Assembly: GCA_044892505.1 (NCBI GenBank)
Contig: CM097882.1
Location: forward strand, 545,290,001 to 545,354,000
DNA from: Schmidtea nova
Taxonomy: Eukaryota
Length of the DNA stretch: 64,000 nt
Direction: 5' to 3'
In this document: positions 44,161-62,338 of the stretch, one piece after another
Layout of the letters: every line of letters starts with the position of its first letter
Position numbering within the stretch: position 1 is the stretch's first letter
Position numbers and translations under genes: made by a program
The notes under the pieces: generated by a model
What the model was told of the DNA's origin: nothing
The model's input: only the letters and a program-made list of their open reading frames with translations
The model's database searches: none

Positions 44161-44517
44161 AAATGAGAGTTGATAATGGCAATGACAGAGATCATAATAA
44201 CAATTGATATGTATAAATAATTTTTGAGCTGCTCACGAGTAGTCCGTTAAGCACCCATTGGGAGGAACCAACTGATCAACTTACCCGAGATGTATAGAAA
44301 GGGGCCCATCGCGGAAATTGGAAAGCTTTTGTGATGTGACTGATCACCACATCTTGCATTAGTAGACCAATGCGATCTTTTTGTATATTTTGGTTGGGGT
44401 GAAAGGTAGGGAAAATTCAATGAGGTTTAAGTGCGCGCAGAAAATATAAATAAAAAGAGAGAACAGAAAACTGATCAGTAAGAAATAAAGAGAATAAGAG
44501 TTAATATGATAACTAAG

Positions 44518-45511
44518 AATAATAGCAACATGAGAATATGAACTCATGATTGTAGGCAACATAAGAATTTGAACCTATGATTGCAGTGAATAATAGCAAC
44601 ATGAGAATATGAACTCATGATTGTAGGCAACATAAGAATTTGAACCTATGATTGCAGTGAATAATGGTAACATGAGAATATAAACTCATGATTGTAGGCA
44701 ACATAAGAATTTGAACCTATGATTGCAGTGAATAATAGCAACATGAGAATATGAACTCATGATTGTAGGCAACATAAGAATTTGAACCTATGATTGCAGT
44801 GAATAATAGCAACATGAGAATATGAACTCATGATTGTAGGCAACATAAGAATTTGAACCTATGATTGCAGTGAATAATAGCAACATGAATATATGAACTC
44901 ATGATTGTAGGCAACATAAGAATTTGAACCTATGATTGCAGTGAATAATAGCAACATGAGAATATGAACTCATGATTGTAGGCAACATAAGAATTTGAAC
45001 CTATGATTGCAGTGAATAATAGCAACATGAGAATATGAACTCATGATTGTAGGCAACATAAGAATTTGAACCTATGATTGCAGTGAATAATAGCAACATG
45101 AGAATATGAACTCATGATTGTAGGCAACATAAGAATTTGAACCTATGATTGCAGTGAATAATAGCAACATGAGAATATGAACTCATGATTGTAGGCAACA
45201 TAAGAATTTGAACCTATGATTGCAGTGAATAATAGCAACATGAGAATATGAACTCATGATTGTAGGCAACATAAGAATTTGAACCTATGATTGCAGTGAA
45301 TAATAGCAACATGAGAATATGAACTCATGATTGTAGGCAACATAAGAATTTGAACCTATGATTGCAGTGAATAATAGCAACATGAGAATATGAACTCATG
45401 ATTGTAGGCAACATAAGAATTTGAACCTATGATTGCAGTGAATAATGGTAACATGAGAATATGAACTCATGATTGTTGGCAACATAAGGAATGTGAACCT
45501 ATGATTGCAAT
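44518..45511. repeat. 71-bp tandem array, ~14 nearly identical copies, decaying to ~45690
   Basis: Unit AATAATAGCAACATGAGAATATGAACTCATGATTGTAGGCAACATAAGAATTTGAACCTATGATTGCAGTG. Confidence 0.95.
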
Positions 45512-46246
45512 AGTGATAGCAACAGAAGGAATATGAACCTTTGATTGCACTGTGGATAACAACATAAGGAATATGAACCTATGGTTGTAATTGTGGAAAT
45601 TTAGTAAATTTAGCAACCTAAGGAATTTGAACCCAGGTTTGCAATTATGTGAAATTAAATGACAACGAAAGGAATATGAACCTAGAGTTGAAGTCGTCGA
45701 CGACGTGAGAATAGTGAACATTAGAGTTTGAGTAATAAAAGTAAAGATGATTAAGAAAACTAGAGATACAGTATGCATACAAGTAGAAATAAGAATAGGA
45801 GAAATTAGAGTTGACTAGAAATAGTGAGAATAGTGAGTAATGATGAGAAATTAGAGATGACCAAGGAAAATTGGTAGAAATAGTGAGAATAATGAGTAAT
45901 GATGATACAATGAATAGTAATAAAATGATAAAACTGAGTCAGGAGAACTCAAGGGAATTAAAGCGTTTGAGCGACAAATTTATTTGGGAGACTGAGGGAA
46001 AAGTAATGAATTTATTTGATAACGATAGATAATTATTACGACCATATAGATAATTGTTACCAGTGAATAGATGATTTAAATAGACTTAAATAAAGGGGAA
46101 ACCGGGAATGGGGAAACAATGGAAACCCAATAATGAGGAATAAAAGCGCAACGATAACAATGATGTATCGTTGAAGTGACTTTTTAATTTAGATATACGG
46201 AACAGAACAAGTCAAACCAACCAACCAATCAATCATAATACGATAA

Positions 46247-48426
46247 CAGAGAAACAGAAAAATTGATAAATTAAAGAAAAGTAAACCGAGATCAAGAACA
46301 GCTAAAAATCAAGAAGTCAATAATTCACAGAGAAACAAATTGAGATCAAGAGCAGTTAGTGCTAGAACCCAAAAAGTTGATAAATCACAGAGAAGTAAAT
46401 CGAAACAAAGAGCAACCAGTGTTACAAAGAAAACAAATCCTAAAGGAAGTAAATCAAGAAGAGTAATAGTAGAAAAGTCAAAAATCGAAAACAGTAAATT
46501 AACAAAAACTAACGGAAGTGAAACAGAAGAAAGTGCAAGTGAATCCCACGATAATTATAATAATACGGAAGCATCAGATAACGAGTCAATAAACACAGAA
46601 GAAGTAGAAGCAGAAATTGATAATAATTCAAACGAAACGAATAACGAGCATACTAGTGAAACAAGAGGAAACGAGAGTAAAACGACACAAGACAGCGGAA
46701 TTGAAATGAACGAACATAAAGAAGAAATCAAAGATAAATTTACGGGAGAACCATTTAATGGAGATGCCAGCAAGTTAGAAACATTTTTAAAAGAATTTGG
46801 TATATTTGTAGAAGTATGTAAATGGAAACCAGAAACGATAAGAAGCAGAATTCAGTTATATTTAAAAGACAGTGCTATAGACTTATATTTAGAAGCTAAA
46901 AATTCAGATGATCAACTCGATAGTTGGGAAAAGATAAAGAATTTTTTCCAGCAAACGTTCGGAATAAATAAAGTATTAAATGAAGCATTTACAGAATTTT
47001 CAATGAGGAAACAAAAAGTTAATGAATCAAATGCAGTATATGCAAGTGAATTAAAGAAATTGGCTAAATTAGCATTTAATCAAAATAGTCCAATGAGTCC
47101 AGAATTAATGGCAGCAATTTTTGTGGGGGGATTGAGAAGACCCGATATAAGAGCACAAGTTGGATGCCAAGGTTGTAAAACAATAGATGAAGCGTTGGAA
47201 ATCGCCAACAGATTTGAATTACATATGATCGGAAGTGAAGGAAGAATTTACTTAGCAATGGATACGACACAAAATGAACAAGCAATAAAGATAAATAACC
47301 ATATTCCGAATTCACAGCAATTAAATCGACCACCACCTCAAAGGAGAAATGAAGGAAACAAAATACAAAATTACAGAAACCAAAATAATTATAGTACGCA
47401 GGACAGACAAAGCAATGTCAAACCTGTGGAAAGTCAGGACATTGGCAACAAGAATGTTTCGCGAATTTAAATTGTAAAAAGTGTGGAATAAAAGGACATG
47501 CGGAAAATAGATGTTACCAAAGATCATGTTATAACTGTGGACAACCAGGTCATATGGCGAAGAATTGCCAGCAACAAAACAACCAACAAAGGAATTGGTC
47601 GAACAACGGAAATCGACAAAATTATGTGAATCAACAGAATAACGGAAACCGTCAGAATTATGGAAATCAACAGAGTAGTTATAATCAGAACAAAAATGCC
47701 AACAAAGAAATACTTTTATTACAAGAAGTTCAAAGATTGACAGAGTTAATAAATAATACACCGAGAGGAAATCAACAAACGAATCAACAACAAATGAATA
47801 TGATGAGAAAAGTGGAAAGTGAAAATGAACGATTAAATCGAGAAAGTCAAGCACGACATGCTCAAGAATGGGCAAGAATACAAAGAGAAGACGAACAGAA
47901 ACGACAAGAAAGAGAACGACAACCATTGAGAATTAATATGATGAGAGCAACGAATCAAACAAGAGATAACAAAGAAGATATTGAACCAGAAACAAACCAG
48001 ATAAACCCAAATCCGGAAGATGAAGAAAACCAAAAAGAAATAGTACAAGAAAACGAAGAAGTTATTAAACAAAAAAGGATGTTGGTAGTCATGCCAAACG
48101 ATCATGTATTTCGATTTGAATATGATGAAAAAGAAGAAGTAGAAGTATTAATTAATAAAATAAACAAGACGATTCCGGGAATGACGAAACTACCCCGAGA
48201 AGCATTTTTACAGACAGAAGACGAAGCAGCAATAAAATTGAAACCAACCGACATATGGAAAGATTTAGGAGTACCAATGAATAAAATGAAAGTCACAGTT
48301 ATCCAAGAAATAGAAGAAAATAACGATGAAGAGAAATCAAAACCAGTAACAAAAGTCAAAAGTAGAGCATTGAAGATATTTGAAGAGAGAATCAAACAAA
48401 GAAGAGCAATGGAAATAGAAAAATGA
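46247..48426 (+). CDS. Gag (capsid-like domain, 3 CCHC knuckles, Q/N-rich region, Ubl-like domain); -1 frame change at ~47395-47415
   Basis: EPFNGDASKLETFL...YLKDSAIDLY...RKQKVNES...FVGGL is retrotransposon gag. The next frame gives CQTCGKSGHWQQEC, CKKCGIKGHAENRC and CYNCGQPGHMAKNC. The frame is open from 46247; first ATG at 46706. Confidence 0.85.
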
Positions 48427-49843
48427 AGAGGCCAAATAAAAGAACCAGAAAACAATGACAAAAAAGAAGAGATACCACCAAAAAATGTACCAGATAAAGT
48501 AGAACAGACAGCACATATAAACATGTTAAGAAACTTAACTAGAGAATTTTCAGATGTAGAAAGTGACAGTGATGTCAGTAGTTTAGCAGGAGATATGCTA
48601 AAAGAACCAGAAAATGAAGACAACCAGATAGAAGTAACAAAGACGCCAGAGAATATACAAATAAAAGAAGATGAAATTCAGAAACTATTAGTTAATGCGT
48701 TAGAAGTGATTTATAACGAAGAATTTATTGATAAGAAGCGATATCGAAAATTTATAAGAGCAGTATTCCGAACGAACTATAAAGAACGGTTACAAAGTCG
48801 TGAAGTAGAGATATTATCAGGATACGTCGTCAAACTATTAGAAGAACCACTCCACGAATACATAATTTTAATAGAAATAAACGAATGTTCACCAAGAATT
48901 TTATCGATGGGTAGAAGACAGATTGGGAAGTTCGTATAAAAACAAATTTATATATTCAGGAAACGAACTTGTAAGACGAGCAACGCATTTGGTAGAAACA
49001 GGCATATGGCCAGGAGAGATAACAACATTATCAATAGGTGACAATAAGAAAGAGGAGAATCTACAAGAAATCGCAAAGGAAGCAAATATGTGTTTTGAGA
49101 TGAGAATTAAACCTCAGTTAGTGGAAAGGAAAGAAAGAATTCTTAGAGAAAATTTAAATTCACTAATAGAACAAATTATTCAACAAATCGACAAGAATAG
49201 AGAAGAGTTAACGAAAACTGAATATGAGAAATTAAAACAATGCATCGAAAATATACGAGATACCAGCCATACGAGATATTCGCCGTACAAGACTTGGAAA
49301 GTGATCGCGAAAATGGGAAAAGCGATGTTTAAACGAGGAGAAATAGGAGATTTAAAAATCAAAGTGAAATTACCAAACGAGGACACAAAAGAAATTGAAG
49401 TAATCGCGGATTGCACAATAGAAGAATTAGTTGATGTTATCAATGAAACTTTATTACAACGGGAAAAAGAAGACGAATTGGTAGACGATATCATCATAAA
49501 ATATAATGAACACGTACTAGGGGATCATGATGAGAGACGATTATATAAAATTGGCATATGGGATAATTACCAAACAATTCATGTTATCAGAATGGATGAT
49601 ACACCAAGAGAAACACCAAAAGACGAAAAAAGGAGACAAGAACGTCGAAGAGAAGCGATGCACAAACTAAGACAAATAATAGAGATTTATCGAAGATGAC
49701 AGATACAGCCAGAATGGGAAAATGTATTAGGAGAATTAAACTTCAACGAACGCCGATTAACACCAGTAGAGAAACACTGGGATGTTAAAGAGAAATGCTG
49801 GAAAGCAAAAGGAGGTATATATGAAGAGGAATTTAGACCAGAA
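48427..49843 (+). CDS. Continuation of the Gag-extension polyprotein, broken by TGA 48424-26, a +1 shift at ~48881-48936 and TGA 49697-99; contains a ubiquitin-like domain
   Basis: Frames stay open directly past both TGAs. LKIKVKLPNEDTKEIEV...TIEELVDVINE...TIHVIR resembles the ubiquitin fold. Confidence 0.65.
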
Positions 49844-52800
49844 ATGGAAGACAAATATGAACCAGAAATTGGAAGAGTTTGTATGGTGATAAGAAAAGTC
49901 ATGCCAACAGATTTAGATGGACCAGAAACCGCAGCAATATGGTTAGAAACGCAAAGACGAAAAGCTGACGAACTTATTGAATTACTAAAAGGAAATGTAC
50001 AAGGAAAAAGGCGAACGATCAAAGGATTAGCCGAATTTTTTGTAGCAGGCGGTGAAGATATAATCAGTTTAAGAAAAGTAGCAAAGGCAGTAACAGAATA
50101 TAAACGAGTTAACGAGTGGTGCCCAGAACAGTTAGACAATGTAATCAAGAAATGGAGAAACCAAGAAAACTCCCAAGAACCACCGCAGAAAATACATTTA
50201 AGGATAATATATCCAGATCGAGAAAAAGAAGAGCTTTGGGTAAGATTAACTGAAAAGATTCGAGATGTTAAAAAGAGATTAAAATATGAACCACCATTTC
50301 ATCTACAACATCAAGGACGATCACTAGAAAACGATATGGAAATTTGGATAACGCCAGCACAGTTAGAACTGGCGAATACGTTAACAGTAGACGCAATAGC
50401 AAATCAACCATTAAAACTTAAAGAGAAAAGAGTAAAAGAAAGTGGAGATACTCAGAATCTAAAGAAGACGATGCAGATAAAGCCAGGAACAAGTGCAATA
50501 CAGTATGAAACATCATCAATAAAAATCCAAGAAAGAACTCAACCACAACCATACGATACAGAAGAAATATTAACAGACAGCGATGATATGCTAGAAGAAT
50601 TAGCAAAATTGACAAAAGAAAAAGGCAATAATATTTTCGAAAGAGTACAAGAGTTACCCACAACGTCAAAAGCAATCAATACCCAAGATGAAGTTGAGCA
50701 AGAAATAGAGATAGAAGAAGTGAACGAAATCTCTGAAGAAGAAGCAAGAGGAGCAAATACAGAAAACGAACGATTAACACAAGAAATGGAAAAATGGTGG
50801 GAACAGAGAAATAACGAACCAAGAGATGTTACAGAAGAAACTGGACGAGAAACCAGATTGATTGAAACAGGTACAACAATGGATAAACGACCTAGAGGTA
50901 GACCAAAGACAGATCCAGCCAATGTAATCAACAAAACCAAAGAGGAAAGGAGACAAGAGAAATGGGAAGTATGTTTAAAGAAACTCAACAAAATAGCAGA
51001 AGCAAAAGACCAGGAAATAACGCAAAAATGTCAAGGTGAAGGATGGATATCAAAAACACTAATGGAAATATTGGCGATAATTGATCCAGAATTGAAAAAA
51101 TGGTGGAGAATAAACGAAATAAGCGACAAGGCTAAAGCATTACATAGCGCAATCGCACCAATCTTACCAGAACTGATAAAAGAGAAGACAAAATCAAGCC
51201 ATTTAGATTGGCAAGGGACCACAACGTTGATAAAGAGGTTAACTGAAGATGCAGAAAATGATAATAAATATGTGATAGCAATTGCGTATACAATTTATAA
51301 CTTATTAACATTGAGTAGAGGTAATCCAAAATCTACGGCATTAGAGAAATATATCAAAAATACGGCAAATATCATAGCAAAAGAAATAGAACCATACGTC
51401 ATCAGTAAAGGAGGATGGGAAACATTTGCTAAAACGAATCAAAGAAACAGTCAAGCAAAGAATATGAAAAAGAAATTTGAAGAAATTTTAGGAGAATTAG
51501 AAAAAGAAAAGTCAGGAACAGGAGGTGGAAAATCTTCACTAAACCTGAATTCAATCATAATGATGATATTAATATGGCTAATTAGCGTTGAAGGAGCAAC
51601 GGCGTTCGAAGTATTTGATTGCGACCAGATGGCATTAGGAGAAAAATATTCATTGAGAGGAACAGAACAATGCAAAGATGCAACTCCAACAGAATTAAAA
51701 GTATTACATAGTAAACAAATATATCACGTATATCAGGAAGCCGACTTAATAAAGACAACAGTTAATGAGTGTAAAATATATAAAACAAGATTTGCTTTTT
51801 ATTGTGGACATCGCCACTACTCTGCAATCGTAATGCCAGGAACGGAAAGAGAAGCGATAATGTTACAAGGAGAAGATTGCAATAAATTGTTTAAACATGG
51901 AGAAGTCGAAACAAGAGATCGAATAAAGATAAGAGGAAAAGCTGGAGTAATACTACAACAAACATATTATGTAGCAGGAGCTATCACAGGAGGAGAAGGT
52001 TACTGTCAAGGAGCAACATATCCAATATTTGGAGTACCAGCAACTAACATGGTAGTAATAGACACGTATACGGTAGAATTAAAAGCGTATGAAGCATATT
52101 TTGACCCAGCAACAGGAGAAATGAAGACGTTATCAATGTGCAAAATTGAAGCCAGTACTTGTCAAACCGGTATGTCAACTTTAACGTATAGAGCAAGAGC
52201 AAATGAATGCCAATTACAATTATTAAAGGAAGCAGAGTTCGACGAGGTACAAGGAAAAATCTTTCAGGAAGAAGATGATGATGAAGTAGCAAGAGGAAAA
52301 CGTCTACAGGAGACAGTAAAAGGAGAGAAACCGTTCACCACTAAAGTACAAGAAAAAGAGGTAAGGATGAGAGAGACGCCAACAGTATTGGTTACATCAA
52401 ACGCAAATATAGGAATGAGGTTTGTAAAAGGAAAACCGGCATTAAAATGTGGTGTTTCTATGTTAGAAACAAATTACCCAGGTATTTATGTATCAAGACA
52501 AGCAGCACCAAATGCAAAACCCAAGATAGACACTACAGACATCAAATTGCACGTATATTTAAATAACAAATTGGATTTTTTATTTCATAAAGGTCAAGCA
52601 TCAATGGAGAAAATATACTACGATCTCATTAACAACGATTGTATATTGAACAGAGAAATATTAAAGACGAAATTAGCAGTAGCAATCACAAACCCGGACA
52701 GTGCTATGCCATTATTACCACTTAACGAAGGTCATTTTGGAAGAGTAGTTGGAGAAGTTATGTATGTATATATATGCCAAAAGACACAAGCAAACCTAGC

Positions 52801-55800
52801 AACAACGACCAGAATACGACAAGGACAATGTACCAACGAATTGGAAATTGAATATAAAGGGAAAATAAGATATGTACAACCAGTGACAAGAATCATTAAC
52901 CCAGTTAGTTTTGAACCAAACCCTTTCAATTGTAGTAATGCATACGGACCGTTATATCAGAAACCAGACGGAAATTGGGTCATGTTTCCGTCAAGATCAG
53001 AAGTACAACCACCTAGAGAATTTGAATTGATGCAACTTTCAAAAGGACGAAAATTTTCCAATATAGATGTAAATAATGGAGGAATTTACAGTGCAAAAGA
53101 TCTCGAAGCAGCACGACAAAATATATTATTTCCAGCTAGGAGAGAAGCAGTATTATCTAGCATTGTAACAATAACAGGAGGAACAAGTTATCAAGGAGGA
53201 CCAAATTATGAATTATTACTGTCACCAGCACACTTTAGGAAAGCAACAGAAAATATGATGAAAGCAATGTGGGGACGATTTTTAATTTTCGGACAAATGA
53301 TGGCCGGAATACTAGGTGTAATTTTAATCATACAAATAATACGAGTGATAATCACACAAATGCTAGCATGCTTTGATATTTATAAAAGAGAAAAGAAAAT
53401 TAATTGGAAATTAATAGCAGGATTTCTACCATTTTTAGCAAAAACGATGGTGTTACATGGTCACTCCAAAGATATTCATAGAATAAAAAGATTATTAAAA
53501 ATACTGGCAAAAATGAAAGGAACAGATGAAGACGTGGGAAGAAAATTCAAAAAGATAATGGCAGATGAACAAGCAAGACTACAATTAAAAAGAGAAAGAA
53601 AAGGATTATGGGAAAGAATAAGAGGAGATAAAACTCAAGACGATTCCAGTGATGACGATGATAACAATGACGACTGTGAAGGAGGGCAAAGGTACGGAAA
53701 CCAAGCACCGCAATATAGCGACAAGAATCCAGCAGAAGCATGGAAATGTCACGCACCTCCACCAACAATGTATCAAGAACCATTACAGGTATCAGGACAC
53801 AGAGCAATGCAAATGATGCCAATGACAACTTTATATCCAATTATACCAGAAGATTATAAACTAAGGCGATGTAGAAGTATGGATCCGCAAGACGATTCAC
53901 TCACAATTGCAGTCATGTCATCAAATACAGGACCAGTATTAACTACAACTATAGAAATAAATGGAAAAGAAATAGAAGCGATGATAGATACAGGAGCAAA
54001 TATTTCGGCGATAGATATTAAATGGATACCGCAAGAACAAAGACAAGAAATTGAAAGAACAAATGTTCATGTAATAGCATGTAGCAAAGAGATAGTCGAA
54101 GTTGCAGGAAGATGGTGGGTGAAAATACGACACCAAAACATAGAAATCGAAACCTATGTAGCAGTAATACCAGCTTTAAGTGTACCATGTATAATCGGAA
54201 CGGATTTAATGCCAACACTATTTAAAGAAATAATCATCGACCTTGGAACAATGAGATTAAAGGACAGAACAGAGAAAATATGTGCCATGAAAACAAAAGT
54301 AATAAACTCGAAACAAATAATGATACCGGAAGAAAGAATCATGACGAGATCACAAACCATCAGAATAAATATGCTCAGAGCGGAAGAAATTAACACAGAT
54401 AGTCAAGTAGACAGTGAGAAAATCGATGTTGACAAAGAAATCATACGAAAAGCCAAAGAAATAAACGAAAGATGGGAAATCAGACAAGGAAAAGACGTAT
54501 TATGGGATATACGACAAATAATTAGTGATTACGCACGAGGATGCCCAACCAAACCAATCATAATAGAATTACTAAAGAAAATACCAGAGATACTCGTATT
54601 ACAAGATACAGGAGGTGCAACTGCACTACACAATGCCATAAGTTGGGGTAAAACGGAAAAGGTAAAAGAATTTTTGAAAATAGCAAAAGAAACGAATCAA
54701 AATCTAGACATTGTAAATCGAGAATTAGAAACGCCAATGATGACAGCAACACTAAGCTTAGCAGATAAAGAAATAGTAGATATGCTGATAAACGCAGAAT
54801 TCAACTGGACAGCTCGTGATAGAAGAGGAAATACAGTTTTGAATCATGCAATAATGAGTGAAAATCAAATGATACTAAAACATATAACAACCAACCTCAC
54901 ATGGGAAATCGATGAATTAATCAAAGGAGAAATTATGAAGGAAGCGATTCGGAAAGGAAACACTAAAACAATATGGAAACTAATACAATGGAAATGGCCG
55001 GATAATAAAACATGGGTATTAGATATAAACAAAGAATTTAGTGAAGGACAAAACGCGCTATTGAGATACTTATTAGAGTTTACGTGCGATCAGAGAACAA
55101 TGTTAGCACTAATGAATAGAGGAAACATAAAAATTAGTAAGAACGAAGAAGAATACAAACTAGAAGTCGAAAAGGAAGCGTTATTCAGAAAAATTTGGGT
55201 ATGGTGTCAAAAACAAATACGCAAAGACATAAGCTACAAAAATCTAAATGATTTCCAAGAAAAGTATAAGATAATAATAAAAGAATACAAGAAGCTAGTG
55301 GAGATATTAAACGATCCAGAAAAATTTAATCAAGCGATAAATCAGAAAGAAGAAAGTAAAAGGATACTCACACCATTATTCAATGCGAAGATAGATTACC
55401 AAGAAAGATTGGATGCAATACACAAAAAAGCAAAGGAACTATTACCAGAATTCAAAGATACTAAATACGCCTTAGAAATACTTGGCGCGATAGTAGAAAA
55501 GGTACACGCGTATGCGAAAGGAATATATAACGGAAACGATATAATAATTATAAAAAGAGAAATGCCAGTTGCATTTTTACTAACTAAAGAAAGAATAATG
55601 CCGATTCATAGAGCATTGAGAGCAGGAAAAGACAGTAAAGTAATCGAAATCGCAAGATTAATGCATCAATGTGGATGTGATATGAATATGATAGACGAAA
55701 AAGGAGACACCCTCATGGTATACGCAGCAAGAGCAAAAACAAAAATCAAAGTATTAGAAGAGTTATATAAAGCAGGTGCAGGATTAATCGGAAAAACTAG

Positions 55801-58579
55801 TAAAGACAACTCAATATTAGACGTGACATTATTAGGTCCAAACTGGGAAATGTTGAATTTCATTAAAACGATAACAAACCAGGAAGAGATAGACTATTTG
55901 ACAGAAACCGTAAAAGGACCAAGCGTATTGACAATGATGCAAAACATCAAATTGACAGAAGAAGTACTAAACTGGAAAATACCAAATACAAATAAACCAG
56001 CATTTAAAGTTAACAAGTTTATGGAGAAAAATCGAAATTGGTGTATCCAAAGCGCACTAATAACTTATATATGGCCCGAAATTGTAGAAATTTTCATGAG
56101 AAGAGAAGACCTGAGATTTACAAACAAGCCCAAAGAAACGGAAAAGATGGTTAAATGGAAAGAATTGATGAAAACACACCTTCAAAGTTGGATAAAAGCC
56201 AAGAAAGAAATTATACAGTATCAGTTAGACAACAAAAAGATACCCGAAGATATAGAATTCCAAGAATTCGAAGCAAGTAACTTAACATCACTATATTATG
56301 CAAAACTAATAGAAACAAGTAATGTCGAGGACGACATTTTTAACGAGCCAGGGAGAGATAATAATACTGACAATGATGATGACGATGAAGAAAACAAGGA
56401 CGACGAGAGAAATAATGACGATGATAATAATAAAAACAATGACGACGAGAGAAATAAAGACGATGATGATGAAAACAATCACGGAAATCCAGATAACCAC
56501 GAACAAACCAACAAAGAAGACGAGAATCAAGAGGGAAATACAAAGAAACAAGAATCCAAAGAACAAAGAGAAGACAACCCTAAAAACAATCATGAAAAGA
56601 AAGGAACAAGTTACAGAAGGAATCCATTATTCAGACCAGAAGTATTAATGTTCGCAATAATCATAACACTTATGGGACAATGTGAAGCAACGAAACAAGA
56701 GATATCAGTAGAAATGGAAGTACCAATACAAAAAGCATCAACACAAATAATGAATTCAAAGGAAATTGAGCAAGTATGTTGGGTCAAAGAGAACGAAATT
56801 CTCGGAGATAACAACCTATTACGATGTATAATCCCAAACCCCGATCGAAAAACTATAATAATAGACGAGATGGATATGGAAACATGGTACAGAATATGTA
56901 CAATCAGAAAACCCAAAGACGAAAAATCACACAAAACAGTTACATGCCAAGTATACAAGACACCCAAAGTCCGATACGAGTTCACCAATGGAATAGACCT
57001 TCCAGGACCATTTTATTTTAGAATAACAAGAGCACCAGCATCAAGAAAAGTCTTACAACCACCAAGAACCAAGATAACAACACCAAGTATAAGGAATACA
57101 ACGGTTAAACCAGAACCAAAAAGACGAACGAAACAAACCACAAGAGTAATCTACAATTCCAAGTTATTATGTATAGCACTTATTATGACAATACTGAAGC
57201 GATTAGAAGAAGGAATAGAAATGGATACAATGACATTAATAGACATGGAAGAAACACAAATGACAAATCAAAAATGTTGGTTTAGAAACGATGAAAAATT
57301 AGAATTAAAGGAATCAAGAGAAATTCAGAAATTGGAAGCGAGTAAAACGAACAAAGTAATCAAGATAATAAAGATAAAAACGGACAGAATTCATAAACTA
57401 TGCTTATTGGAAAAAGAGAGAAACAAGAAAGGAATAACCAATTGTAAAACATTCCAAGCAGGAAAAATAATAACGTTTGCAAGAAAAATAGGAAAAGGAA
57501 ACAAACAGAATTTCCAGAAATTAACCATAACGTTAGAAATAACGGGAATAGAACAAAACGTAAACGGAGTATGCTGGAGAAAATACGAGAAAGAAACGAA
57601 TAATCATAAATCATCACAATGTCAAACAGTCAGAGGAACAACTGCAGTACAAATAAAAAGCTTAGAAAGAAATCAAACGTATGAAATATGCCTAGTAAAG
57701 GAAAATGATCAAATAACGAAAGAAGATTTAGAATGCAGAATATACAAAGCACCGAACAGAGTAAAAACCAGTAAAACAATACGAAAGAATAAAAGACAAC
57801 AAAAACCGAAGTATACCACTACCGAAAGTCAAACAGAACCAGAGAGAAAAACCTCAGCAACACTTATACTTTGGAAATTAGATGACAAAACAGTGGAAAT
57901 ATGTTGGTCAATAATCAAGAAATACAAAGAAAGACAACCACAACAATGCGAAAAGATGAATAAAGAAGAGGAGATCAGAATTCAGAACCTACAATTGGAC
58001 AAACAATACGAAATATGCGCAATAGAAAAGGCAGATAAATTTGGAAACCAACAAGAAAAATGTGGAAACTACTATACACCGACAAATACAACGATCAAAG
58101 GAAGAATCAAGAAACTAACATTCGGAGAATTGAATCAAACAACGAAACAAATGGAAAACGAGGAAACAATAATAGATTCTTATGCCAAATGGAAACCAGA
58201 AAAAGTAATCCATGAAGTCAAAAGGAAACAACAAGAACGAAAACAATTGGAACTCAAATTAAAAGGACAATATGGACCAATGATCAATCAAAGCAAATTC
58301 ACCCAAATCAATGTTAACAAGCAAGGAAGAGAACTAATTGGAGTAGGAATACTGGCAGTATGTGCACCAGTAATAATAATACTCTCAATAATATGGCTAT
58401 GGGACATAATAAAAAAGAAACCAACCAGACAATGGCCAGATATAAAGATTATGAATTGTAAAATCAAGATACCAGAAGAAGTAAAGAAAGAATTCCAAAG
58501 AAGAACCAAAGGCAAAGAATTTTGGAAGCAGATCGAAGACGAGGAGCGACACGATGAAAAAGCAGTGATGATAGTATAG
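49844..58579 (+). CDS. 2911-aa multidomain polyprotein: Ubl-like, AT-hook, Bcl-2-like, class III envelope, retropepsin, ankyrins, FN3-like membrane protein
   Basis: Uninterrupted 8.7-kb ORF; domain motifs are listed as separate features. Confidence 0.92.
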   Translation: MEDKYEPEIGRVCMVIRKVMPTDLDGPETAAIWLETQRRKADELIELLKGNVQGKRRTIKGLAEFFVAGGEDIISLRKVAKAVTEYKRVNEWCPEQLDNVIKKWRNQENSQEPPQKIHLRIIYPDREKEELWVRLTEKIRDVKKRLKYEPPFHLQHQGRSLENDMEIWITPAQLELANTLTVDAIANQPLKLKEKRVKESGDTQNLKKTMQIKPGTSAIQYETSSIKIQERTQPQPYDTEEILTDSDDMLEELAKLTKEKGNNIFERVQELPTTSKAINTQDEVEQEIEIEEVNEISEEEARGANTENERLTQEMEKWWEQRNNEPRDVTEETGRETRLIETGTTMDKRPRGRPKTDPANVINKTKEERRQEKWEVCLKKLNKIAEAKDQEITQKCQGEGWISKTLMEILAIIDPELKKWWRINEISDKAKALHSAIAPILPELIKEKTKSSHLDWQGTTTLIKRLTEDAENDNKYVIAIAYTIYNLLTLSRGNPKSTALEKYIKNTANIIAKEIEPYVISKGGWETFAKTNQRNSQAKNMKKKFEEILGELEKEKSGTGGGKSSLNLNSIIMMILIWLISVEGATAFEVFDCDQMALGEKYSLRGTEQCKDATPTELKVLHSKQIYHVYQEADLIKTTVNECKIYKTRFAFYCGHRHYSAIVMPGTEREAIMLQGEDCNKLFKHGEVETRDRIKIRGKAGVILQQTYYVAGAITGGEGYCQGATYPIFGVPATNMVVIDTYTVELKAYEAYFDPATGEMKTLSMCKIEASTCQTGMSTLTYRARANECQLQLLKEAEFDEVQGKIFQEEDDDEVARGKRLQETVKGEKPFTTKVQEKEVRMRETPTVLVTSNANIGMRFVKGKPALKCGVSMLETNYPGIYVSRQAAPNAKPKIDTTDIKLHVYLNNKLDFLFHKGQASMEKIYYDLINNDCILNREILKTKLAVAITNPDSAMPLLPLNEGHFGRVVGEVMYVYICQKTQANLATTTRIRQGQCTNELEIEYKGKIRYVQPVTRIINPVSFEPNPFNCSNAYGPLYQKPDGNWVMFPSRSEVQPPREFELMQLSKGRKFSNIDVNNGGIYSAKDLEAARQNILFPARREAVLSSIVTITGGTSYQGGPNYELLLSPAHFRKATENMMKAMWGRFLIFGQMMAGILGVILIIQIIRVIITQMLACFDIYKREKKINWKLIAGFLPFLAKTMVLHGHSKDIHRIKRLLKILAKMKGTDEDVGRKFKKIMADEQARLQLKRERKGLWERIRGDKTQDDSSDDDDNNDDCEGGQRYGNQAPQYSDKNPAEAWKCHAPPPTMYQEPLQVSGHRAMQMMPMTTLYPIIPEDYKLRRCRSMDPQDDSLTIAVMSSNTGPVLTTTIEINGKEIEAMIDTGANISAIDIKWIPQEQRQEIERTNVHVIACSKEIVEVAGRWWVKIRHQNIEIETYVAVIPALSVPCIIGTDLMPTLFKEIIIDLGTMRLKDRTEKICAMKTKVINSKQIMIPEERIMTRSQTIRINMLRAEEINTDSQVDSEKIDVDKEIIRKAKEINERWEIRQGKDVLWDIRQIISDYARGCPTKPIIIELLKKIPEILVLQDTGGATALHNAISWGKTEKVKEFLKIAKETNQNLDIVNRELETPMMTATLSLADKEIVDMLINAEFNWTARDRRGNTVLNHAIMSENQMILKHITTNLTWEIDELIKGEIMKEAIRKGNTKTIWKLIQWKWPDNKTWVLDINKEFSEGQNALLRYLLEFTCDQRTMLALMNRGNIKISKNEEEYKLEVEKEALFRKIWVWCQKQIRKDISYKNLNDFQEKYKIIIKEYKKLVEILNDPEKFNQAINQKEESKRILTPLFNAKIDYQERLDAIHKKAKELLPEFKDTKYALEILGAIVEKVHAYAKGIYNGNDIIIIKREMPVAFLLTKERIMPIHRALRAGKDSKVIEIARLMHQCGCDMNMIDEKGDTLMVYAARAKTKIKVLEELYKAGAGLIGKTSKDNSILDVTLLGPNWEMLNFIKTITNQEEIDYLTETVKGPSVLTMMQNIKLTEEVLNWKIPNTNKPAFKVNKFMEKNRNWCIQSALITYIWPEIVEIFMRREDLRFTNKPKETEKMVKWKELMKTHLQSWIKAKKEIIQYQLDNKKIPEDIEFQEFEASNLTSLYYAKLIETSNVEDDIFNEPGRDNNTDNDDDDEENKDDERNNDDDNNKNNDDERNKDDDDENNHGNPDNHEQTNKEDENQEGNTKKQESKEQREDNPKNNHEKKGTSYRRNPLFRPEVLMFAIIITLMGQCEATKQEISVEMEVPIQKASTQIMNSKEIEQVCWVKENEILGDNNLLRCIIPNPDRKTIIIDEMDMETWYRICTIRKPKDEKSHKTVTCQVYKTPKVRYEFTNGIDLPGPFYFRITRAPASRKVLQPPRTKITTPSIRNTTVKPEPKRRTKQTTRVIYNSKLLCIALIMTILKRLEEGIEMDTMTLIDMEETQMTNQKCWFRNDEKLELKESREIQKLEASKTNKVIKIIKIKTDRIHKLCLLEKERNKKGITNCKTFQAGKIITFARKIGKGNKQNFQKLTITLEITGIEQNVNGVCWRKYEKETNNHKSSQCQTVRGTTAVQIKSLERNQTYEICLVKENDQITKEDLECRIYKAPNRVKTSKTIRKNKRQQKPKYTTTESQTEPERKTSATLILWKLDDKTVEICWSIIKKYKERQPQQCEKMNKEEEIRIQNLQLDKQYEICAIEKADKFGNQQEKCGNYYTPTNTTIKGRIKKLTFGELNQTTKQMENEETIIDSYAKWKPEKVIHEVKRKQQERKQLELKLKGQYGPMINQSKFTQINVNKQGRELIGVGILAVCAPVIIILSIIWLWDIIKKKPTRQWPDIKIMNCKIKIPEEVKKEFQRRTKGKEFWKQIEDEERHDEKAVMIV
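50990..51430 (+). other. Bcl-2-like domain within the polyprotein
   Basis: BH1-like LDWQGTTTLIK (cf. NWGRIVAL) and BH2-like YVISKGGWETF (cf. WI...GGW..F) at the usual spacing. Confidence 0.65.
51548..53460 (+). other. Envelope glycoprotein, chuvirus G / herpes gB-like (class III) type
   Basis: Internal signal SIIMMILIWLISVEGATA|FEVFDC, YSL...C, CKIYKTRFAFYCGHRHYS, YCQGATY, NNKLDFLF, C-terminal W..F.IFGQMMAGILGVILII TM and a second hydrophobic stretch. Confidence 0.8.
53930..54260 (+). other. Retroviral-type aspartic protease
   Basis: IEINGKEIEAMIDTGANISAI (DTG at 53987-95) and PCIIGTDL. Confidence 0.9.
54600..55870 (+). other. Two ankyrin-repeat clusters (~54600-54900 and ~55595-55870)
   Basis: DTGGATALHNAISWG, NRELETPMMTA, DRRGNTVLNHAI; PIHRAL, DEKGDTLMVYAA, KDNSILDVT. 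Confidence 0.8.
56639..58410 (+). other. Signal-like segment, four FN3-like repeats and a C-terminal TM
   Basis: Four units of xCW...I..L.....Y.IC.......C..Y.T, then TM LIGVGILAVCAPVIIILSIIWLW. Confidence 0.6.
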
Positions 58580-59037: not shown

Positions 59038-59134
59038 TCAAATTGTAGCGGAAAATTGTATATATGTAAAAATAAAACTCTAGAGAAATCAAAAAACAAA
59101 GAACAAATCAATGTATGTATATATTATTGTAGAA

Positions 59135-60490
59135 ATGGATAAAGAGGAACGAGCAGTCGAGATTTTGAGAGCAGCAAACAGAAAGTGGAACAAGAGATTT
59201 GTATGTGGATATTGTAATAATTTATTACGGAAACCAAAGCAAACCACCTGTGGATGTAGATTATGTACTAGATGTGTACAAGTGTTAGAGTTGAAAAGAA
59301 TAACAGAATGTCCAGAATGTAAAGAAGGACAAATAGTGTTAGACGAAACAAGACCAGATAGAGCAACTCAGAGAGAAATCATGAGCATACTAATTGAATG
59401 TATAAATCCACCGTGCATATGGCAAGGACAAATCAGCGAAATTGAAAATCATATAGGAAATTGTGAAGAAAAGAGAAGCGAATGTGAAAAGTGTAAAGAA
59501 ACGATAATTTTAAAAGACAAAGAAAAACACAGAGATGAATGCAAAGAGGAAGAAATCGCATGTGAATATTGCGAAATTCGAGAAACAAGGAGAAAAATTG
59601 AAGAGGAACACATCAATATAAAAGAAGAAAAAATATGCGAACAGTATGTAGGAGTGTGCCCAAACAAATGTGAAATTACCGAAGAAGTGAAATTACGAGA
59701 ACATTGGGAAAAGTGTACAGAAATACCAAGAGAATGTCCTTACAACAGATATGGATGCAAAGAAAAGAAATCTCAACAAAATATGAAACAACATTTAGAA
59801 ACAGAAGCAATCAATCATATTGAAATGACAGACAGAACAATTCAGAAATTAGAAAAAGAAGTGGAATCTCATAAAATAATGATGAACCTATTATTAGAAA
59901 CGAGAGAACAATTTGAATTAACCCGAGAAAAGATGGAAAAGAAAATAATAGCCATCAAGGAATTAGCAAAAGGAATGAAAGTGCAATATAACAAGTTAAT
60001 ACAAGAAATTGATGAGAAAAAAGATTTACCAATAGCACCTTATGTGTGGAAAATAACGGATTTCCGAAATAAATTGGAAGATGCACGAAGCTTCAAGAAA
60101 ACTGCGGTAATAAGCCCACCATTTTACTTATGGAAAAACGGGGCTAAAGTGAGATTGAAAGTATATCCAAACGGAGATGGGACAAGTATTGGAAAACACG
60201 TATCGATATTTTTTGCGTTTTGCAAAGGAGAATATGACTATTTAATCGATTGGCCGATAGGAGTAGGAGTAATGATAAAAATCAGGGGTTTAAACGAAAC
60301 CATAGAAAAGAGATTCACGACAGAAAAAGGAGCAGTTATGAGTAACAGACCAACAGAAGAATGTGGATTAGCAAGTGGAGAACCACACTTTGTATTACAA
60401 AGCAAGATATGGGGATTATTGTATGAGGACACCTTATACATAGAAATGGAAAGGAACGAGAAGGCAGATAGAAAAGGATGGTTGGCGTAG
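59135..60490 (+). CDS. Full-length TRAF-like protein (RING, TRAF zinc fingers, coiled coil, MATH), 451 aa from ATG 59135, intronless
   Basis: CGYC..LLRKPKQTTCGCRLCTRC...CPEC; C...C.W.G...EIENH...C; CPYNRYGC...MKQHL; MATH YVWKITDF...SPPFY...YPNGDG...HVSIFF...GEYD..I.WP. Confidence 0.92.
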   Translation: MDKEERAVEILRAANRKWNKRFVCGYCNNLLRKPKQTTCGCRLCTRCVQVLELKRITECPECKEGQIVLDETRPDRATQREIMSILIECINPPCIWQGQISEIENHIGNCEEKRSECEKCKETIILKDKEKHRDECKEEEIACEYCEIRETRRKIEEEHINIKEEKICEQYVGVCPNKCEITEEVKLREHWEKCTEIPRECPYNRYGCKEKKSQQNMKQHLETEAINHIEMTDRTIQKLEKEVESHKIMMNLLLETREQFELTREKMEKKIIAIKELAKGMKVQYNKLIQEIDEKKDLPIAPYVWKITDFRNKLEDARSFKKTAVISPPFYLWKNGAKVRLKVYPNGDGTSIGKHVSIFFAFCKGEYDYLIDWPIGVGVMIKIRGLNETIEKRFTTEKGAVMSNRPTEECGLASGEPHFVLQSKIWGLLYEDTLYIEMERNEKADRKGWLA

Positions 60491-60595: not shown

Positions 60596-61699
60596 ATGGG
60601 AAACGTCGAAATCAGTTTACAAGAAGTAACCGAACATCAAGATGAAGTTATTTGTGAGCTTTTAGAACAAATTGAAAGTTGGATCCACGCATATTACCAC
60701 AAACAAAAAGAAGTAGAAAGACAAGCCGAACAAATAACAGAAGCCAAAAGATTAAAGCAATTAAGTCAAGATAAAATAGACGAACTATATGAATTATTGG
60801 AGAAACAAAAAGAATATTATAAAAAGATGATGAAAGAACGACGAGAAGAAAAAGAGCGAGAACGAACAGAAATGGAACGGAAAATGTACTCCATTACCGA
60901 GCAAGCAAGATATTGGAAAAAAGAAGCGAAAGAATCTTATACGAAAGCAAGAGAAATAATCGAAAGAACGGCGTACAGCGATGATTGGAAATTATTTGAA
61001 GAAATCGATAAATTAAAAGAGGAATTAGAACAGAAAACCTATCAGGAAATATCGAGCAAAAAATGGAATAAAAAGAGACAACAATTTATCAGAGAGCAAG
61101 CAGGAAAAATTAAACAACTTATGCACCAGATTGAAAGATCGGAAAGAGAATTGTATTTCAGTAAACAACAATCAGATGCAAACCTCAGAGCAGGGATGCA
61201 GAAAGAGGAAGATATGAAGCGCGATATTAATGGTTATCAAGGAGTAATCACTCAAAAGAAGATAGAATTAAAGAAAACTAAAGAAAGATTAGAAGAAGCA
61301 AAACAAAGCTATGAAGAAAATTTATTAAAATTAGAAGAAGCAAAACAAAGCTATGAGGAAAATTTATTAAATTTAACCAAAGAAAATGAAGAGTTGAAAC
61401 AAAAATTGATACAAAAATTAACACCACCAAAAGAGACAGATATCACCAAAGCAGTAATAAAAATGATGGAAGAGGAAGAGAAAAACAATAAAATAACAGA
61501 ATTAGAAAAACAGATCGAAGCATTAACAGAACAATCAAACTATTTAGAATATCTGTTGGATGAAGAAATCCAATTATCACACTTCTATCGAGACGAAGTA
61601 ACAATGTGGAGAAACACGATAGTGTGGTTACCACCCCCTACAAACCAAGTGGAACCTCAAGATGAAGGTTTTCACGAACCCAATGAGTCGTTAGTATAA
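60596..61699 (+). CDS. Orphan long coiled-coil protein, 367 aa
   Basis: Intact E/K/Q-rich ORF with a 14-aa internal duplication (LEEAKQSYEENLL). Confidence 0.7.
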   Translation: MGNVEISLQEVTEHQDEVICELLEQIESWIHAYYHKQKEVERQAEQITEAKRLKQLSQDKIDELYELLEKQKEYYKKMMKERREEKERERTEMERKMYSITEQARYWKKEAKESYTKAREIIERTAYSDDWKLFEEIDKLKEELEQKTYQEISSKKWNKKRQQFIREQAGKIKQLMHQIERSERELYFSKQQSDANLRAGMQKEEDMKRDINGYQGVITQKKIELKKTKERLEEAKQSYEENLLKLEEAKQSYEENLLNLTKENEELKQKLIQKLTPPKETDITKAVIKMMEEEEKNNKITELEKQIEALTEQSNYLEYLLDEEIQLSHFYRDEVTMWRNTIVWLPPPTNQVEPQDEGFHEPNESLV

Positions 61700-61774: not shown

Positions 61775-62338
61775 ATGAAGAAGCTCACAATACTGATAAT
61801 CCTAAATGTAATCGAAATCACCCAACAAAGAGAAGACCGTGCGATATCAAAAGAAAATCTACAAGTCTTACCCGAGAAAATCTATAAAGAAATAGATGAT
61901 CTATTAAAAGAAACAGTCAAAGAAATCTCTCAAATTCAATTGTCAACAGCACCTAACCCAGTAGCAACGCAACAAACCCTGTGTAAAATCAATAACAAAT
62001 TAGAGAAGATTCGAAAAACCCTAAAAGAAAGTAAAGAAACTATAAAGAGTTTACATCGAGCAGAAATTCAATACCAAGAGAGATGGATCGTTGCGATCAT
62101 AATCGTGTTAACAATTAGTACAACAACCTGCGCAATTACCATTCTCATCGCAGTATACAGAATAAAGATCTTAAAACAAAAACAATCAATCATCAATCAA
62201 ACAACAGCACATGATGACAATGCCCGAAGACGAATGAGAAATCAGCTCAACAGAATACGAACCCAATACGAGTTACCAGTAATTCCACAGAACCAGTCCA
62301 ATCCAGTGCGAGTTATGAACTATTTATATAAACCATAA
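61775..62338 (+). CDS. Orphan predicted membrane protein, 187 aa (signal, coiled coil, TM)
   Basis: MKKLTILIILNVIEI signal-like start, coiled coil, and TM WIVAIIIVLTISTTTCAITILIAVY. Confidence 0.65.
   Translation: MKKLTILIILNVIEITQQREDRAISKENLQVLPEKIYKEIDDLLKETVKEISQIQLSTAPNPVATQQTLCKINNKLEKIRKTLKESKETIKSLHRAEIQYQERWIVAIIIVLTISTTTCAITILIAVYRIKILKQKQSIINQTTAHDDNARRRMRNQLNRIRTQYELPVIPQNQSNPVRVMNYLYKP

What the first reader, a model, noticed from the sequence alone, without database searches (positions are those of the whole stretch)
54260..54600. No RT, RNase H or integrase, yet the LTRs are almost identical
After the protease and a TRSQ linker-like motif (54344) the frame passes straight into ankyrins. 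I find no YxDD, PFGL, RNase H or HHCC/DDE motifs between the LTRs. About six LTR differences in 1447 bp imply recent insertion, so the element was probably mobilised in trans. It may be a helper-dependent element that supplies env and host modulators, or half of a bipartite system.
Basis: partly seen in the sequence, partly recalled or inferred. Interest (0 to 1): 0.85.

Follow-up and report, generated by a model that had tools for sequence, protein, structure and literature searches.

The report
Pol-less giant planarian-type retrovirus-like element
This is a young copy of a known kind of giant flatworm ("Burro"-type) retrovirus-like element that keeps capsid, envelope, protease and host-like signalling genes but lacks the enzymes needed to copy and insert itself, so it probably depended on a complete relative.

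Summary
Between two direct repeats (40323-41769 and 62554-64000; 4 substitutions plus 2 one-base indels) no reverse transcriptase, RNase H or integrase is found by a six-frame Pfam scan or by tblastn with a relative's pol. A 2911-codon ORF runs from a mononegavirus-type fusion glycoprotein through a retroviral protease straight into ankyrin repeats.

One correction: the 1447 bp is a lower bound. The repeat is cut by a masked stretch on the left and by the window end on the right, so LTR ends, primer site and target-site duplication cannot be seen.

The element matches published Burro/GYPSM1-type giant Ty3/gypsy elements of planarians: gag with a CCHC knuckle, env in frame ahead of protease, TRAF/MATH, RING, ankyrin and internal tandem repeats. 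The closest relative found encodes glycoprotein, two proteases, RT, RNase H and integrase in one 3003-aa ORF. It aligns with the window up to the protease and not beyond, so pol is missing here and the family is not pol-less.

The ankyrin part has the element's A-rich composition, so it is not a fresh host capture. Copying in trans is plausible but untested. A later deletion or a misassembly is not excluded. The bipartite, env-supplying idea is not supported.

The parts
40323..41769 (+). 5' long terminal repeat, visible part only. Its left edge is hidden in the masked run 40190-40322 and its right end is undefined.
   Evidence: Aligns with 62554-64000 at 99.6% identity. The flank 40140-40189 does not match the sequence ahead of the 3' copy. 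It holds three copies of a 40-nt unit with a palindromic core.
62554..64000 (+). 3' long terminal repeat, visible part only; it runs off the window end.
41935..42525 (+). ORF of 196 aa with no family assignment. It may lie in the leader or still inside the LTR.
   Evidence: only a sub-threshold Pfam hit. A-rich like the other element genes.
43484..43945 (+). 153-aa ORF with a C-terminal C3HC4 RING finger.
   Evidence: Pfam zf-C3HC4_3, E 2.8e-11. Its N-terminal part is 31% identical to the N-terminus of relative P0009, where a RING lies upstream of gag in one protein model.
43984..45585 (.). Two internal tandem-repeat arrays: a 25-bp unit x 7.6 and a 71-bp unit x about 14-17.
   Evidence: Tandem repeats are drawn in published Burro maps (PMC6431247, Fig. 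2 legend).
46247..49843 (+). Gag-to-polyprotein stretch: capsid-like gag, CCHC zinc knuckle and further parts collinear with relative P0093. Read against that continuous relative it is interrupted four times (two changes of frame, two in-frame stops; places not given).
   Evidence: Retrotrans_gag E 1.6e-4. zf-CCHC E 5e-11. Gag relatives down to E 9e-92. Collinear matches to P0093.
49844..58579 (+). Uninterrupted ORF of 2911 aa. Order: unknown N-terminal part, signal peptide, fusion glycoprotein, TM and tail, protease, ankyrin-repeat region, acidic low-complexity stretch, cysteine-repeat ectodomain, TM, short tail.
51365..51469 (+). Possible BCL-2-like (BH2-region) stretch just ahead of the glycoprotein. 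A lead only.
   Evidence: All 37 weak PDB matches (E 0.5-1.5) are Bcl-xL, at its C-terminal helices. The AF2 model was unusable, pLDDT 43.
51551..53419 (+). Envelope: mononegavirus/chuvirus-type fusion glycoprotein, with a signal peptide at aa 564-588 and a TM at aa 1152-1170.
   Evidence: Pfam PF24664 E 5.9e-68. 35% identity over 904 aligned positions (window aa 570-1456) with P0096, E 6e-150. 45% identity with P0003. Hydropathy.
53945..54217 (+). Retroviral-type aspartyl protease with the D-T-G active-site motif present. It is the only pol-type domain left.
   Evidence: Pfam RVP E 2e-8. 50% identity to the PR region of P0094. Aligns with both PR copies of P0096.
54557..55858 (+). Ankyrin-repeat region, in two blocks (aa about 1572-1687 and 1915-2005). 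It stands where relatives carry RT-RNase H-integrase.
   Evidence: Pfam Ank_2 E 5e-11. PDB ankyrin/DARPin matches at both blocks. A content 46.5% and A3 53%, like the rest of the element.
56777..58393 (+). C-terminal membrane-protein module: about four units with a recurring four-cysteine spacing, then a strong TM (aa 2832-2850).
   Evidence: Cysteine positions and hydropathy. No family hit.
59111..60490 (+). Full-length TRAF-like protein (RING, TRAF zinc fingers, coiled coil, MATH/TRAF-C).
   Evidence: Pfam MATH_2 E 2.7e-20 and zf-TRAF E 5e-8. PDB TRAF2/3/5 TRAF domains, E about 1e-19.
60596..61699 (+). 367-aa lysine/glutamate-rich protein that looks coiled-coil by its sequence, with a 42-bp duplication. 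No family assignment.
61775..62338 (+). 187-aa small membrane protein (N-terminal hydrophobic stretch and one internal TM), just ahead of the 3' LTR.

Best explanation
The region 40.3-64.0 kb is one copy of a giant Ty3/gypsy-type, retrovirus-like LTR element of the kind described in dugesiid planarians as Burro/GYPSM1. Its order is: LTR, RING ORF, tandem repeats, gag with zinc knuckle, one very long ORF (glycoprotein, then protease), TRAF-like gene, two further ORFs, LTR.

In complete relatives the protease is followed in the same ORF by RT, RNase H and integrase. In this copy that whole block is absent (one missing block), and the ORF continues in frame into an ankyrin-repeat region and a second membrane-protein module. 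The copy cannot reverse-transcribe or integrate with its own products.

Because its two LTRs are 99.6% identical, it was laid down recently. The most likely history is that a pol-less RNA genome was copied and inserted by enzymes from a complete relative. Either it was born deleted during reverse transcription of a full-length parent, or it belongs to a non-autonomous lineage.

Shown: the anatomy, the absence of pol, the presence of pol at that position in relatives, and the element-like composition of the ankyrin part. Inferred: the host, the family name, and mobilisation in trans.
For: - Anatomy.
- No RT/RH/IN: six-frame Pfam scan, tblastn with the relative's pol, tblastx with L002.
- Relative P0096 (3003 aa) has Monjiviricetes_fusion, two PR, RVT_1, RT_RNaseH, Integrase_H2C2 and rve in one ORF, flanked by LTR-like repeats about 20 kb apart in L002. 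It aligns collinearly with window aa 570-1456 and no further.
- Gag relatives from one UniParc accession block include a model that joins gag, PR and Integrase_H2C2 (P0012).
- The same UniParc block holds an ABCG protein 91% identical to the window's host gene.
- Published Burro description: gag+CCHC, MATH_TRAF_C, BCL2-like, env in frame between gag and pol, PR-dUTPase-RT-RH-IN, RING, ankyrin, tandem repeats, internal region up to 25 kb, genome over 70% A/T (PMC6431247 section 7; PMC11410931). Here the internal region is about 20.8 kb.
- The GAG-ENV-POL order is reported for Platyhelminthes (PMC13524379).
- LTR identity.
- All element modules, including the post-protease part, are 42-49% A with A3 50-59% (ORF196 is lower: 40% A, A3 37%), against 33% A in the host ABCG. 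The ankyrin part is therefore a long-resident element gene.
Against: - No second copy of this element could be examined, so a pol-less lineage is not shown.
- Neither outer LTR end is visible, so there is no target-site duplication and no primer site.
- The in-frame junction carries only weak weight: one deletion in three keeps the frame.
- The gag-to-polyprotein stretch is interrupted four times, so this copy is not fully intact, unless some interruptions are natural ORF boundaries or assembly errors.
- No named Burro sequence could be compared. The family assignment rests on domain architecture, on literature, and on relatives at 33-45% identity.
- The host is inferred, not named by any tool.
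Confidence: 0.55

Rival explanations
1. A complete, autonomous copy inserted recently and afterwards lost the RT-RNase H-integrase block through one internal genomic deletion that happened to keep the reading frame. No trans-mobilisation is then needed.
For: - Internal deletions are common in LTR elements (general knowledge).
- The internal region of about 20.8 kb plus a 3.5-4 kb pol block would give the roughly 25 kb reported for Burro (PMC6431247).
- The copy already shows four interruptions upstream, so it has changed since it was functional.
- Only one copy was seen.
Against: - The deletion would have to remove pol while leaving the protease domain and the ankyrin region whole and in frame, within the short time allowed by 0.4% LTR divergence.
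- About 11.8 kb of downstream coding sequence shows no interruption at all.
Confidence: 0.28
2. Assembly artefact: repeat-rich long-read or scaffolded assembly collapsed or mis-joined two related copies, creating a pol-less chimera and possibly some of the frame changes.
For: - Planarian genomes are described as hard to assemble because of Burro elements and AT bias (PMC11410931).
- A masked or gap stretch abuts the 5' LTR.
- Both LTR indels lie in A4 homopolymer runs.
Against: - The junction lies inside an uninterrupted 2911-codon ORF with uniform composition on both sides.
- No N run or repeat boundary lies within the long ORF.
Confidence: 0.07
3. One reading: a dedicated env and host-modulator component that pairs with a separate pol-carrying, env-less partner.
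For: The copy keeps gag, env, protease and several signalling-type genes and lacks only pol.
Against: - Pol-bearing relatives carry their own glycoprotein in the same position and ORF (PMC6431247).
- No env-less partner is known or seen.
Confidence: 0.04
4. A domesticated provirus: the host keeps the long ORF (glycoprotein, protease, ankyrin, membrane module) for its own use.
For: There is a very long intact ORF next to a decayed gag region.
Against: - Near-identical LTRs indicate a young insertion, not an old conserved locus.
- The composition is that of the element, not of host genes.
Confidence: 0.03

Closest known systems
Burro1-4 / GYPSM1 giant Ty3/gypsy LTR retroelements of the planarian Schmidtea mediterranea and Burro-like elements of other Dugesiidae (Jurka 2007; Grohme et al. 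2018; reviewed in PMC6431247)
   Same: Giant internal region. Gag with CCHC knuckle. Mononegavirus-like fusion glycoprotein in frame ahead of the protease. TRAF/MATH, RING and ankyrin modules, partly as separate accessory ORFs. Internal tandem repeats. An AT-rich flatworm-like host context.
   Different: No dUTPase, RT, RNase H or integrase. BIR was not found, and BCL2-like and ubiquitin-like parts are unconfirmed. Gag is only 33-38% identical to the nearest database relatives. No named Burro sequence was compared directly.
GAG-ENV-POL 'errantivirus'-type Ty3/gypsy elements with gB-type class III envelope in Platyhelminthes, Nematoda and Bryozoa (Chary & Hayashi, PMC13524379)
   Same: Env lies between gag and the pol-type domains. 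The glycoprotein belongs to a family that the paper likens structurally to class III fusogens.
   Different: Those elements were selected for an intact pol, which is absent here. This element is far larger and carries host-like accessory genes.
ENA metagenome contigs L002/L001 (sample ERZ25039515), the closest relatives found here
   Same: LTR-flanked element of about 20 kb. A separate gag ORF, then one polyprotein with a glycoprotein (41% identity by tblastn) and protease that is collinear with the window.
   Different: They carry two proteases, RT, RNase H and integrase. Their accessory genes are an RNase_T-like exonuclease and P4Ha_N-like genes, not ankyrin/TRAF/RING.
Non-autonomous LTR retrotransposons (LARD, TRIM and similar helper-dependent derivatives)
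   Same: LTRs without RT or integrase, and a presumed dependence on a complete relative.
   Different: Those have little or no coding capacity. This copy keeps gag, env, protease and more than 11 kb of open coding sequence. Copy number and an autonomous partner are unknown.
Replication-defective transducing retroviruses (a functional analogy only)
   Same: A viral polyprotein continues in frame into non-viral-type domains where replication genes should be, and a helper would be needed.
   Different: The non-viral part here is not a fresh host capture, because it has the element's own A-rich composition. Ankyrin repeats are already reported in complete Burro elements.
Mosquito BEL/Pao elements with a captured chuvirus-like glycoprotein (Dezordi et al., PMC7642597)
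   Same: An LTR retroelement carrying a glycoprotein likened to those of Chuviridae. Here the match is to Pfam PF24664, the Monjiviricetes fusion family.
   Different: A different retroelement superfamily, a different host phylum and a different gene order; pol is present there.

Membership tests
Burro/GYPSM1-type giant planarian Ty3/gypsy elements | Long terminal direct repeats around an internal region of more than 20 kb | tested here: met
   Repeats of at least 1447 bp lie 22,231 bp apart at 99.6% identity. Their true ends are not visible.
Burro/GYPSM1-type giant planarian Ty3/gypsy elements | Gag with Retrotrans_gag fold and CCHC zinc knuckles | tested here: met
   Retrotrans_gag E 1.6e-4, which is below Pfam's cut-off. 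zf-CCHC E 5e-11. Gag relatives with the same domains reach E 9e-92. Capsid and knuckle lie in different frames in this copy.
Burro/GYPSM1-type giant planarian Ty3/gypsy elements | Mononegavirus-like fusion glycoprotein in frame between gag and protease | tested here: met
   PF24664 (E 5.9e-68) and RVP lie in the same 2911-aa ORF. P0003 and P0096 have the same arrangement.
Burro/GYPSM1-type giant planarian Ty3/gypsy elements | PR-(dUTPase)-RT-RNase H-integrase block | tested here: not met
   Only PR is present. No RVT, RNase H, rve, Integrase or dUTPase family was found, and tblastn was negative.
Burro/GYPSM1-type giant planarian Ty3/gypsy elements | Accessory apoptosis/ubiquitin-type modules (MATH/TRAF, RING or BIR, ankyrin, BCL2-like, ubiquitin-like) | tested here: met
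   MATH/TRAF, RING and ankyrin are clear. BCL2-like rests only on weak Bcl-xL hits. Ubiquitin-like rests only on hints at E 0.04-1. BIR was not found.
Burro/GYPSM1-type giant planarian Ty3/gypsy elements | Internal tandem repeats | tested here: met
   Arrays with 25-bp and 71-bp units between the RING ORF and gag.
Burro/GYPSM1-type giant planarian Ty3/gypsy elements | Host is a dugesiid planarian | tested here: inconclusive
   GC is 22-39%. The ABCG gene is 91% identical to an unnamed UniParc protein from the same accession block as the gag relatives. The best named flatworm hit is Macrostomum, at 39%. No tool named the species.
Burro/GYPSM1-type giant planarian Ty3/gypsy elements | Sequence similarity to the named Burro1-4 or GYPSM1 references | not testable with these tools
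   No named Burro protein came back from any search, and none was fetched.
GAG-ENV-POL Ty3/gypsy elements with class III env (PMC13524379) | Gene order gag, env, pol | tested here: inconclusive
   Gag, env and protease stand in that order. The rest of pol is absent.
GAG-ENV-POL Ty3/gypsy elements with class III env (PMC13524379) | RT falls in the Ty3/gypsy clade | not testable with these tools
   There is no RT here. Relative P0096 has RVT_1, RT_RNaseH, Integrase_H2C2 and rve in the Ty3/gypsy order.
GAG-ENV-POL Ty3/gypsy elements with class III env (PMC13524379) | Env has a class III fusogen fold | not tested
   Only a sequence match to PF24664 was obtained. There is no PDB relative by sequence, and no structure model of env was made.
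Non-autonomous, helper-dependent LTR retroelements | LTRs present, RT and integrase absent | tested here: met
Non-autonomous, helper-dependent LTR retroelements | Primer binding site and polypurine tract retained | tested here: inconclusive
   The LTR inner ends are not definable. No TGG-type site lies in 41769-41935, and the window holds no tRNA.
Non-autonomous, helper-dependent LTR retroelements | Several copies with the same deletion at different loci, each with its own target-site duplication | not testable with these tools
   The host genome is not in the collections by exact look-up. The rest of the window holds no other copy.
Non-autonomous, helper-dependent LTR retroelements | Autonomous partner with matching LTR ends in the same genome | not testable with these tools
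   Pol-bearing relatives were found only at 35-45% protein identity, in another sample.
Transducing (host-gene-capturing) defective retroviruses | The insert is a recent host-derived sequence | tested here: not met
   The post-protease region has the element's A-rich signature (A 46.5%, A3 53%) and not that of the host gene (A 33%).

The most novel reading that the evidence does not exclude
A propagating lineage of pol-less giant flatworm retrovirus-like elements. It would keep gag, a functional-looking envelope, protease and a 2911-aa ORF in which an ankyrin-repeat region and a second membrane glycoprotein stand where RT-RNase H-integrase should be. It would live as a coding, enveloped 'satellite' of complete Burro-type elements. 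The intact long ORF beside a decayed gag would then reflect selection on the envelope/ankyrin polyprotein.
Probability: 0.25. Interest if true: 0.65.

Novelty: new variant of a known kind. Interest (0 to 1): 0.4.

Why it matters
Burro-type elements are among the largest retroelements known, fill a large part of planarian genomes, and carry apoptosis- and ubiquitin-type genes of unknown role. A young copy that has lost only the replication enzymes but keeps envelope, protease and more than 11 kb of open accessory coding sequence would matter if it is one of many. It would show that these giant elements spawn coding, helper-dependent derivatives, more like defective viruses than like the empty non-autonomous LTR elements of plants. 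It would also point to the accessory polyprotein as the part under selection. If it is a single deleted copy, it is an ordinary by-product of retroelement turnover.

Tried and rejected
- Exact look-ups of three window proteins (TRAF-like, the long ORF, the RING ORF) found nothing on record. The look-up of P0094 also failed.
- The protein search with the protease-ankyrin part, limited to proteins of 1600-5094 aa, gave only generic ankyrin proteins.
- AlphaFold single-sequence models of the putative BCL2-like part and of the post-protease region were unusable (pLDDT 43 and 39). I therefore ran no fold search.
- PDB sequence searches for the glycoprotein, the N-terminal part and the stretch ahead of the long ORF gave nothing significant.
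- NCBIfam added nothing, Rfam found no family, and the window holds no tRNA.
- A search for an LTR-end inverted repeat and a TGG-type primer site was inconclusive.
- Rejected: a hidden or divergent RT; pol elsewhere in the window; a recent host capture of the ankyrin part.
- Not done: I did not read the gag-to-polyprotein stretch as one joined protein, because that would join frames. I did not infer the masked 5' LTR edge from the 3' copy.
Full report
**Observation.** The window is AT-rich (GC 0.16-0.39 in 2-kb bins; the 0.16 bin is mostly masked). A direct repeat, 40323-41769 and 62554-64000, differs by 2 transitions, 2 transversions and 2 one-base indels in A4 runs, which is 99.6% identity. 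The repeat begins at the first base after the masked run 40190-40322 and ends at the last base of the window. The outer LTR ends, the inner end of the 5' LTR, the primer site and any target-site duplication cannot be read. The flank just left of the masked run does not resemble the sequence ahead of the 3' copy, so the element does start within the masked stretch. I left that stretch unfilled.

**Gene content.** All genes between the repeats lie on the + strand, in this order:
- a 196-aa ORF;
- a 153-aa ORF ending in a C3HC4 RING;
- two tandem-repeat arrays;
- a gag region with a Retrotrans_gag-like capsid and a CCHC knuckle;
- one uninterrupted ORF of 2911 aa;
- a full-length TRAF-like gene (RING, TRAF zinc fingers, MATH; PDB TRAF2/3/5 at E about 1e-19);
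- a 367-aa ORF that looks coiled-coil by its sequence;
- a small membrane protein.

The long ORF contains, in order:
- a signal peptide and a fusion glycoprotein of the Monjiviricetes family (PF24664, E 5.9e-68) with a TM and tail;
- a retroviral aspartyl protease (RVP, aa 1368-1458, D-T-G present);
- with no stop in between, an ankyrin-repeat region in two blocks;
- an acidic stretch;
- a cysteine-repeat ectodomain with a second TM.

**No pol.** Three tests agree.
- A Pfam scan of all 128 open segments of at least 50 aa, in six frames, over 40323-62643 found no RT, RNase H, integrase or dUTPase family at E<=0.01.
- tblastn with the RT-RH and IN parts of the closest pol-bearing relative gave nothing inside the element at E<=10.
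- tblastx of that relative's whole locus matched only glycoprotein and protease.

The other 40 kb of the window holds no RT and no similarity to the element.

**Relatives.** The glycoprotein piece has one database relative, P0003 (45% identity). It is a glycoprotein-protease fusion from an ENA metagenome assembly. Its cluster-mate P0096 is a 3003-aa ORF carrying the glycoprotein, two proteases, RVT_1, RT_RNaseH, Integrase_H2C2, rve and an MLV-type IN C-terminal domain.

P0096 lies on contig L002, downstream of a separate gag ORF. The element there is bounded by LTR-like repeats about 20 kb apart that start with TG, and it also encloses an RNase_T-like exonuclease and P4Ha_N-like genes. A 95%-identical second copy, L001, has the same region split into many small genes.

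The window's ORF aligns collinearly with P0096 from the signal peptide through the protease (35% identity, E 6e-150). After that, no similarity remains. The family therefore normally has pol exactly where this copy has ankyrin repeats.

The gag search over 1.8 billion representatives gave nine relatives at E<1e-30 (33-38% identity). All are unnamed UniParc entries from one accession block. Among them:
- P0093 is collinear with the window's gag, knuckle and following stretches;
- P0009 has a RING ahead of gag;
- P0012 joins gag, protease and an integrase zinc domain.

**Host and family.** The window's ABCG/white-like gene (21655-23751, minus strand) is 91% identical to a UniParc protein from that same accession block. 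The best named flatworm hit is Macrostomum, at 39%.

The literature matches the element closely. Burro/GYPSM1 elements of Schmidtea mediterranea and other Dugesiidae are giant gypsy-like LTR elements whose polyprotein runs gag+CCHC, MATH_TRAF_C, Ubi2, BCL2-like, env, PR, dUTPase, RT, RH, IN. [quoted passage not shown] They also carry RING, BIR, ankyrin and tandem repeats, with accessory domains that may be separate ORFs in other species. Their internal region reaches 25 kb, in a genome over 70% A/T (PMC6431247 section 7; PMC11410931). The GAG-ENV-POL order is also reported for flatworm elements (PMC13524379).

I therefore file this as a Burro-type element from a planarian-like host. The name rests on architecture and literature. 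No named Burro sequence was compared, and the RT-based criterion cannot be applied.

**What the missing pol means.** The internal region here is about 20.8 kb. Adding a pol block of 3.5-4 kb would give the published maximum. Every coding module of the element, including the post-protease part, is 42-49% A with 50-59% A at third positions (ORF196 is lower: 40% A, A3 37%). The host ABCG is 33% A. The ankyrin region is thus an old resident of the element and not a fresh host capture. This fits the report of ankyrin repeats in complete Burro elements.

With 0.4% LTR divergence the copy is young, and as it stands it cannot have made itself. The leading reading (0.55 for the whole statement; about 0.85 for identity and absence of pol) is that a pol-less genome was copied by enzymes from a complete relative. 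Either it was born deleted during reverse transcription, or it belongs to a non-autonomous lineage. A later in-frame genomic deletion (0.28) and a misassembly (0.07) remain open.

The bipartite, 'env supplier' idea is not supported, because complete relatives carry their own env.

**An unexplained point.** Read against the continuous relative P0093, the stretch from gag to the long ORF (46247-49843) is interrupted four times: two changes of frame and two in-frame stops. The roughly 11.8 kb of coding sequence downstream has no interruption. If interruptions fell at random, this split would have a probability of about 0.003. Some of them may be natural ORF boundaries, since L002 also has gag and the polyprotein as separate ORFs. 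Others may be assembly errors. Alternatively, the lineage had lost gag integrity while the long ORF stayed constrained (note 4).

**Limits and disclosures.**
- Two single-sequence structure models failed.
- I looked up three metagenome contigs (L001-L003) that encode relatives returned by the protein search, and I only read and compared them. I stopped there and ran no pattern scans.
- While counting interruptions I worked out where the open segments meet. The script output lists the bounds of all open segments (they were needed as references for the Pfam scan), which shows those places implicitly. I give only counts here.

Noticed in passing
window 28849-29364 (-), with 27796-28440 (-) and 25854-26285 (-): A 172-aa open segment with a P-loop ATPase gives weak hits to Pox_A32 (2.1e-5) and RNA_helicase (4.4e-6). 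It lies next to a 214-aa signal+TM ORF and a weak CCHC segment. This may be a remnant of another virus-like or Maverick/Polinton-like insert.
   Followed up: partly
window 10257-11684 (+) and 35417-37066 (-): Two hAT-type transposase remnants (DUF4371; Dimer_Tnp_hAT). The second is a 549-aa open ORF.
   Followed up: partly
window 21655-23751 (-): An ABCG/white-like transporter is encoded as one 698-aa ORF without introns. It is 91% identical to an unnamed UniParc protein and is the best clue to the host.
   Followed up: yes
window 19.3-20.8 kb: Three open segments match dynein light chain type 1 (best E 1.4e-10). They are partly interrupted by a masked run.
   Followed up: no
window 30256-30737: A 241-bp tandem duplication (88% identity) lies in a stretch with very high GC skew (0.47 at 30-32 kb).
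   Followed up: no
window 40908-41114 (= 63139-63345) and 41650-41810: The LTR holds three copies of a 40-nt unit with a palindromic core. Near its visible end there are three short hairpin-like units. These may be regulatory repeats.
   Followed up: no
window 46247-49843 versus 49844-62338: All four interruptions of the element's reading frames lie in the gag-to-polyprotein stretch, and none lies in about 11.8 kb of downstream coding sequence (P about 0.003 if random). This is unexplained (note 4).
   Followed up: partly
L002 16542-17882 and 20304-21005: The pol-bearing relative carries an RNase_T-like exonuclease and P4Ha_N-like genes between its LTRs, where the window's element has ankyrin/TRAF/RING. 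Accessory gene sets differ between lineages.
   Followed up: partly
P0096 aa 1250-1560 (L002): The relative has two protease domains in tandem ahead of RT, while the window has one. The window's protease aligns with both.
   Followed up: no
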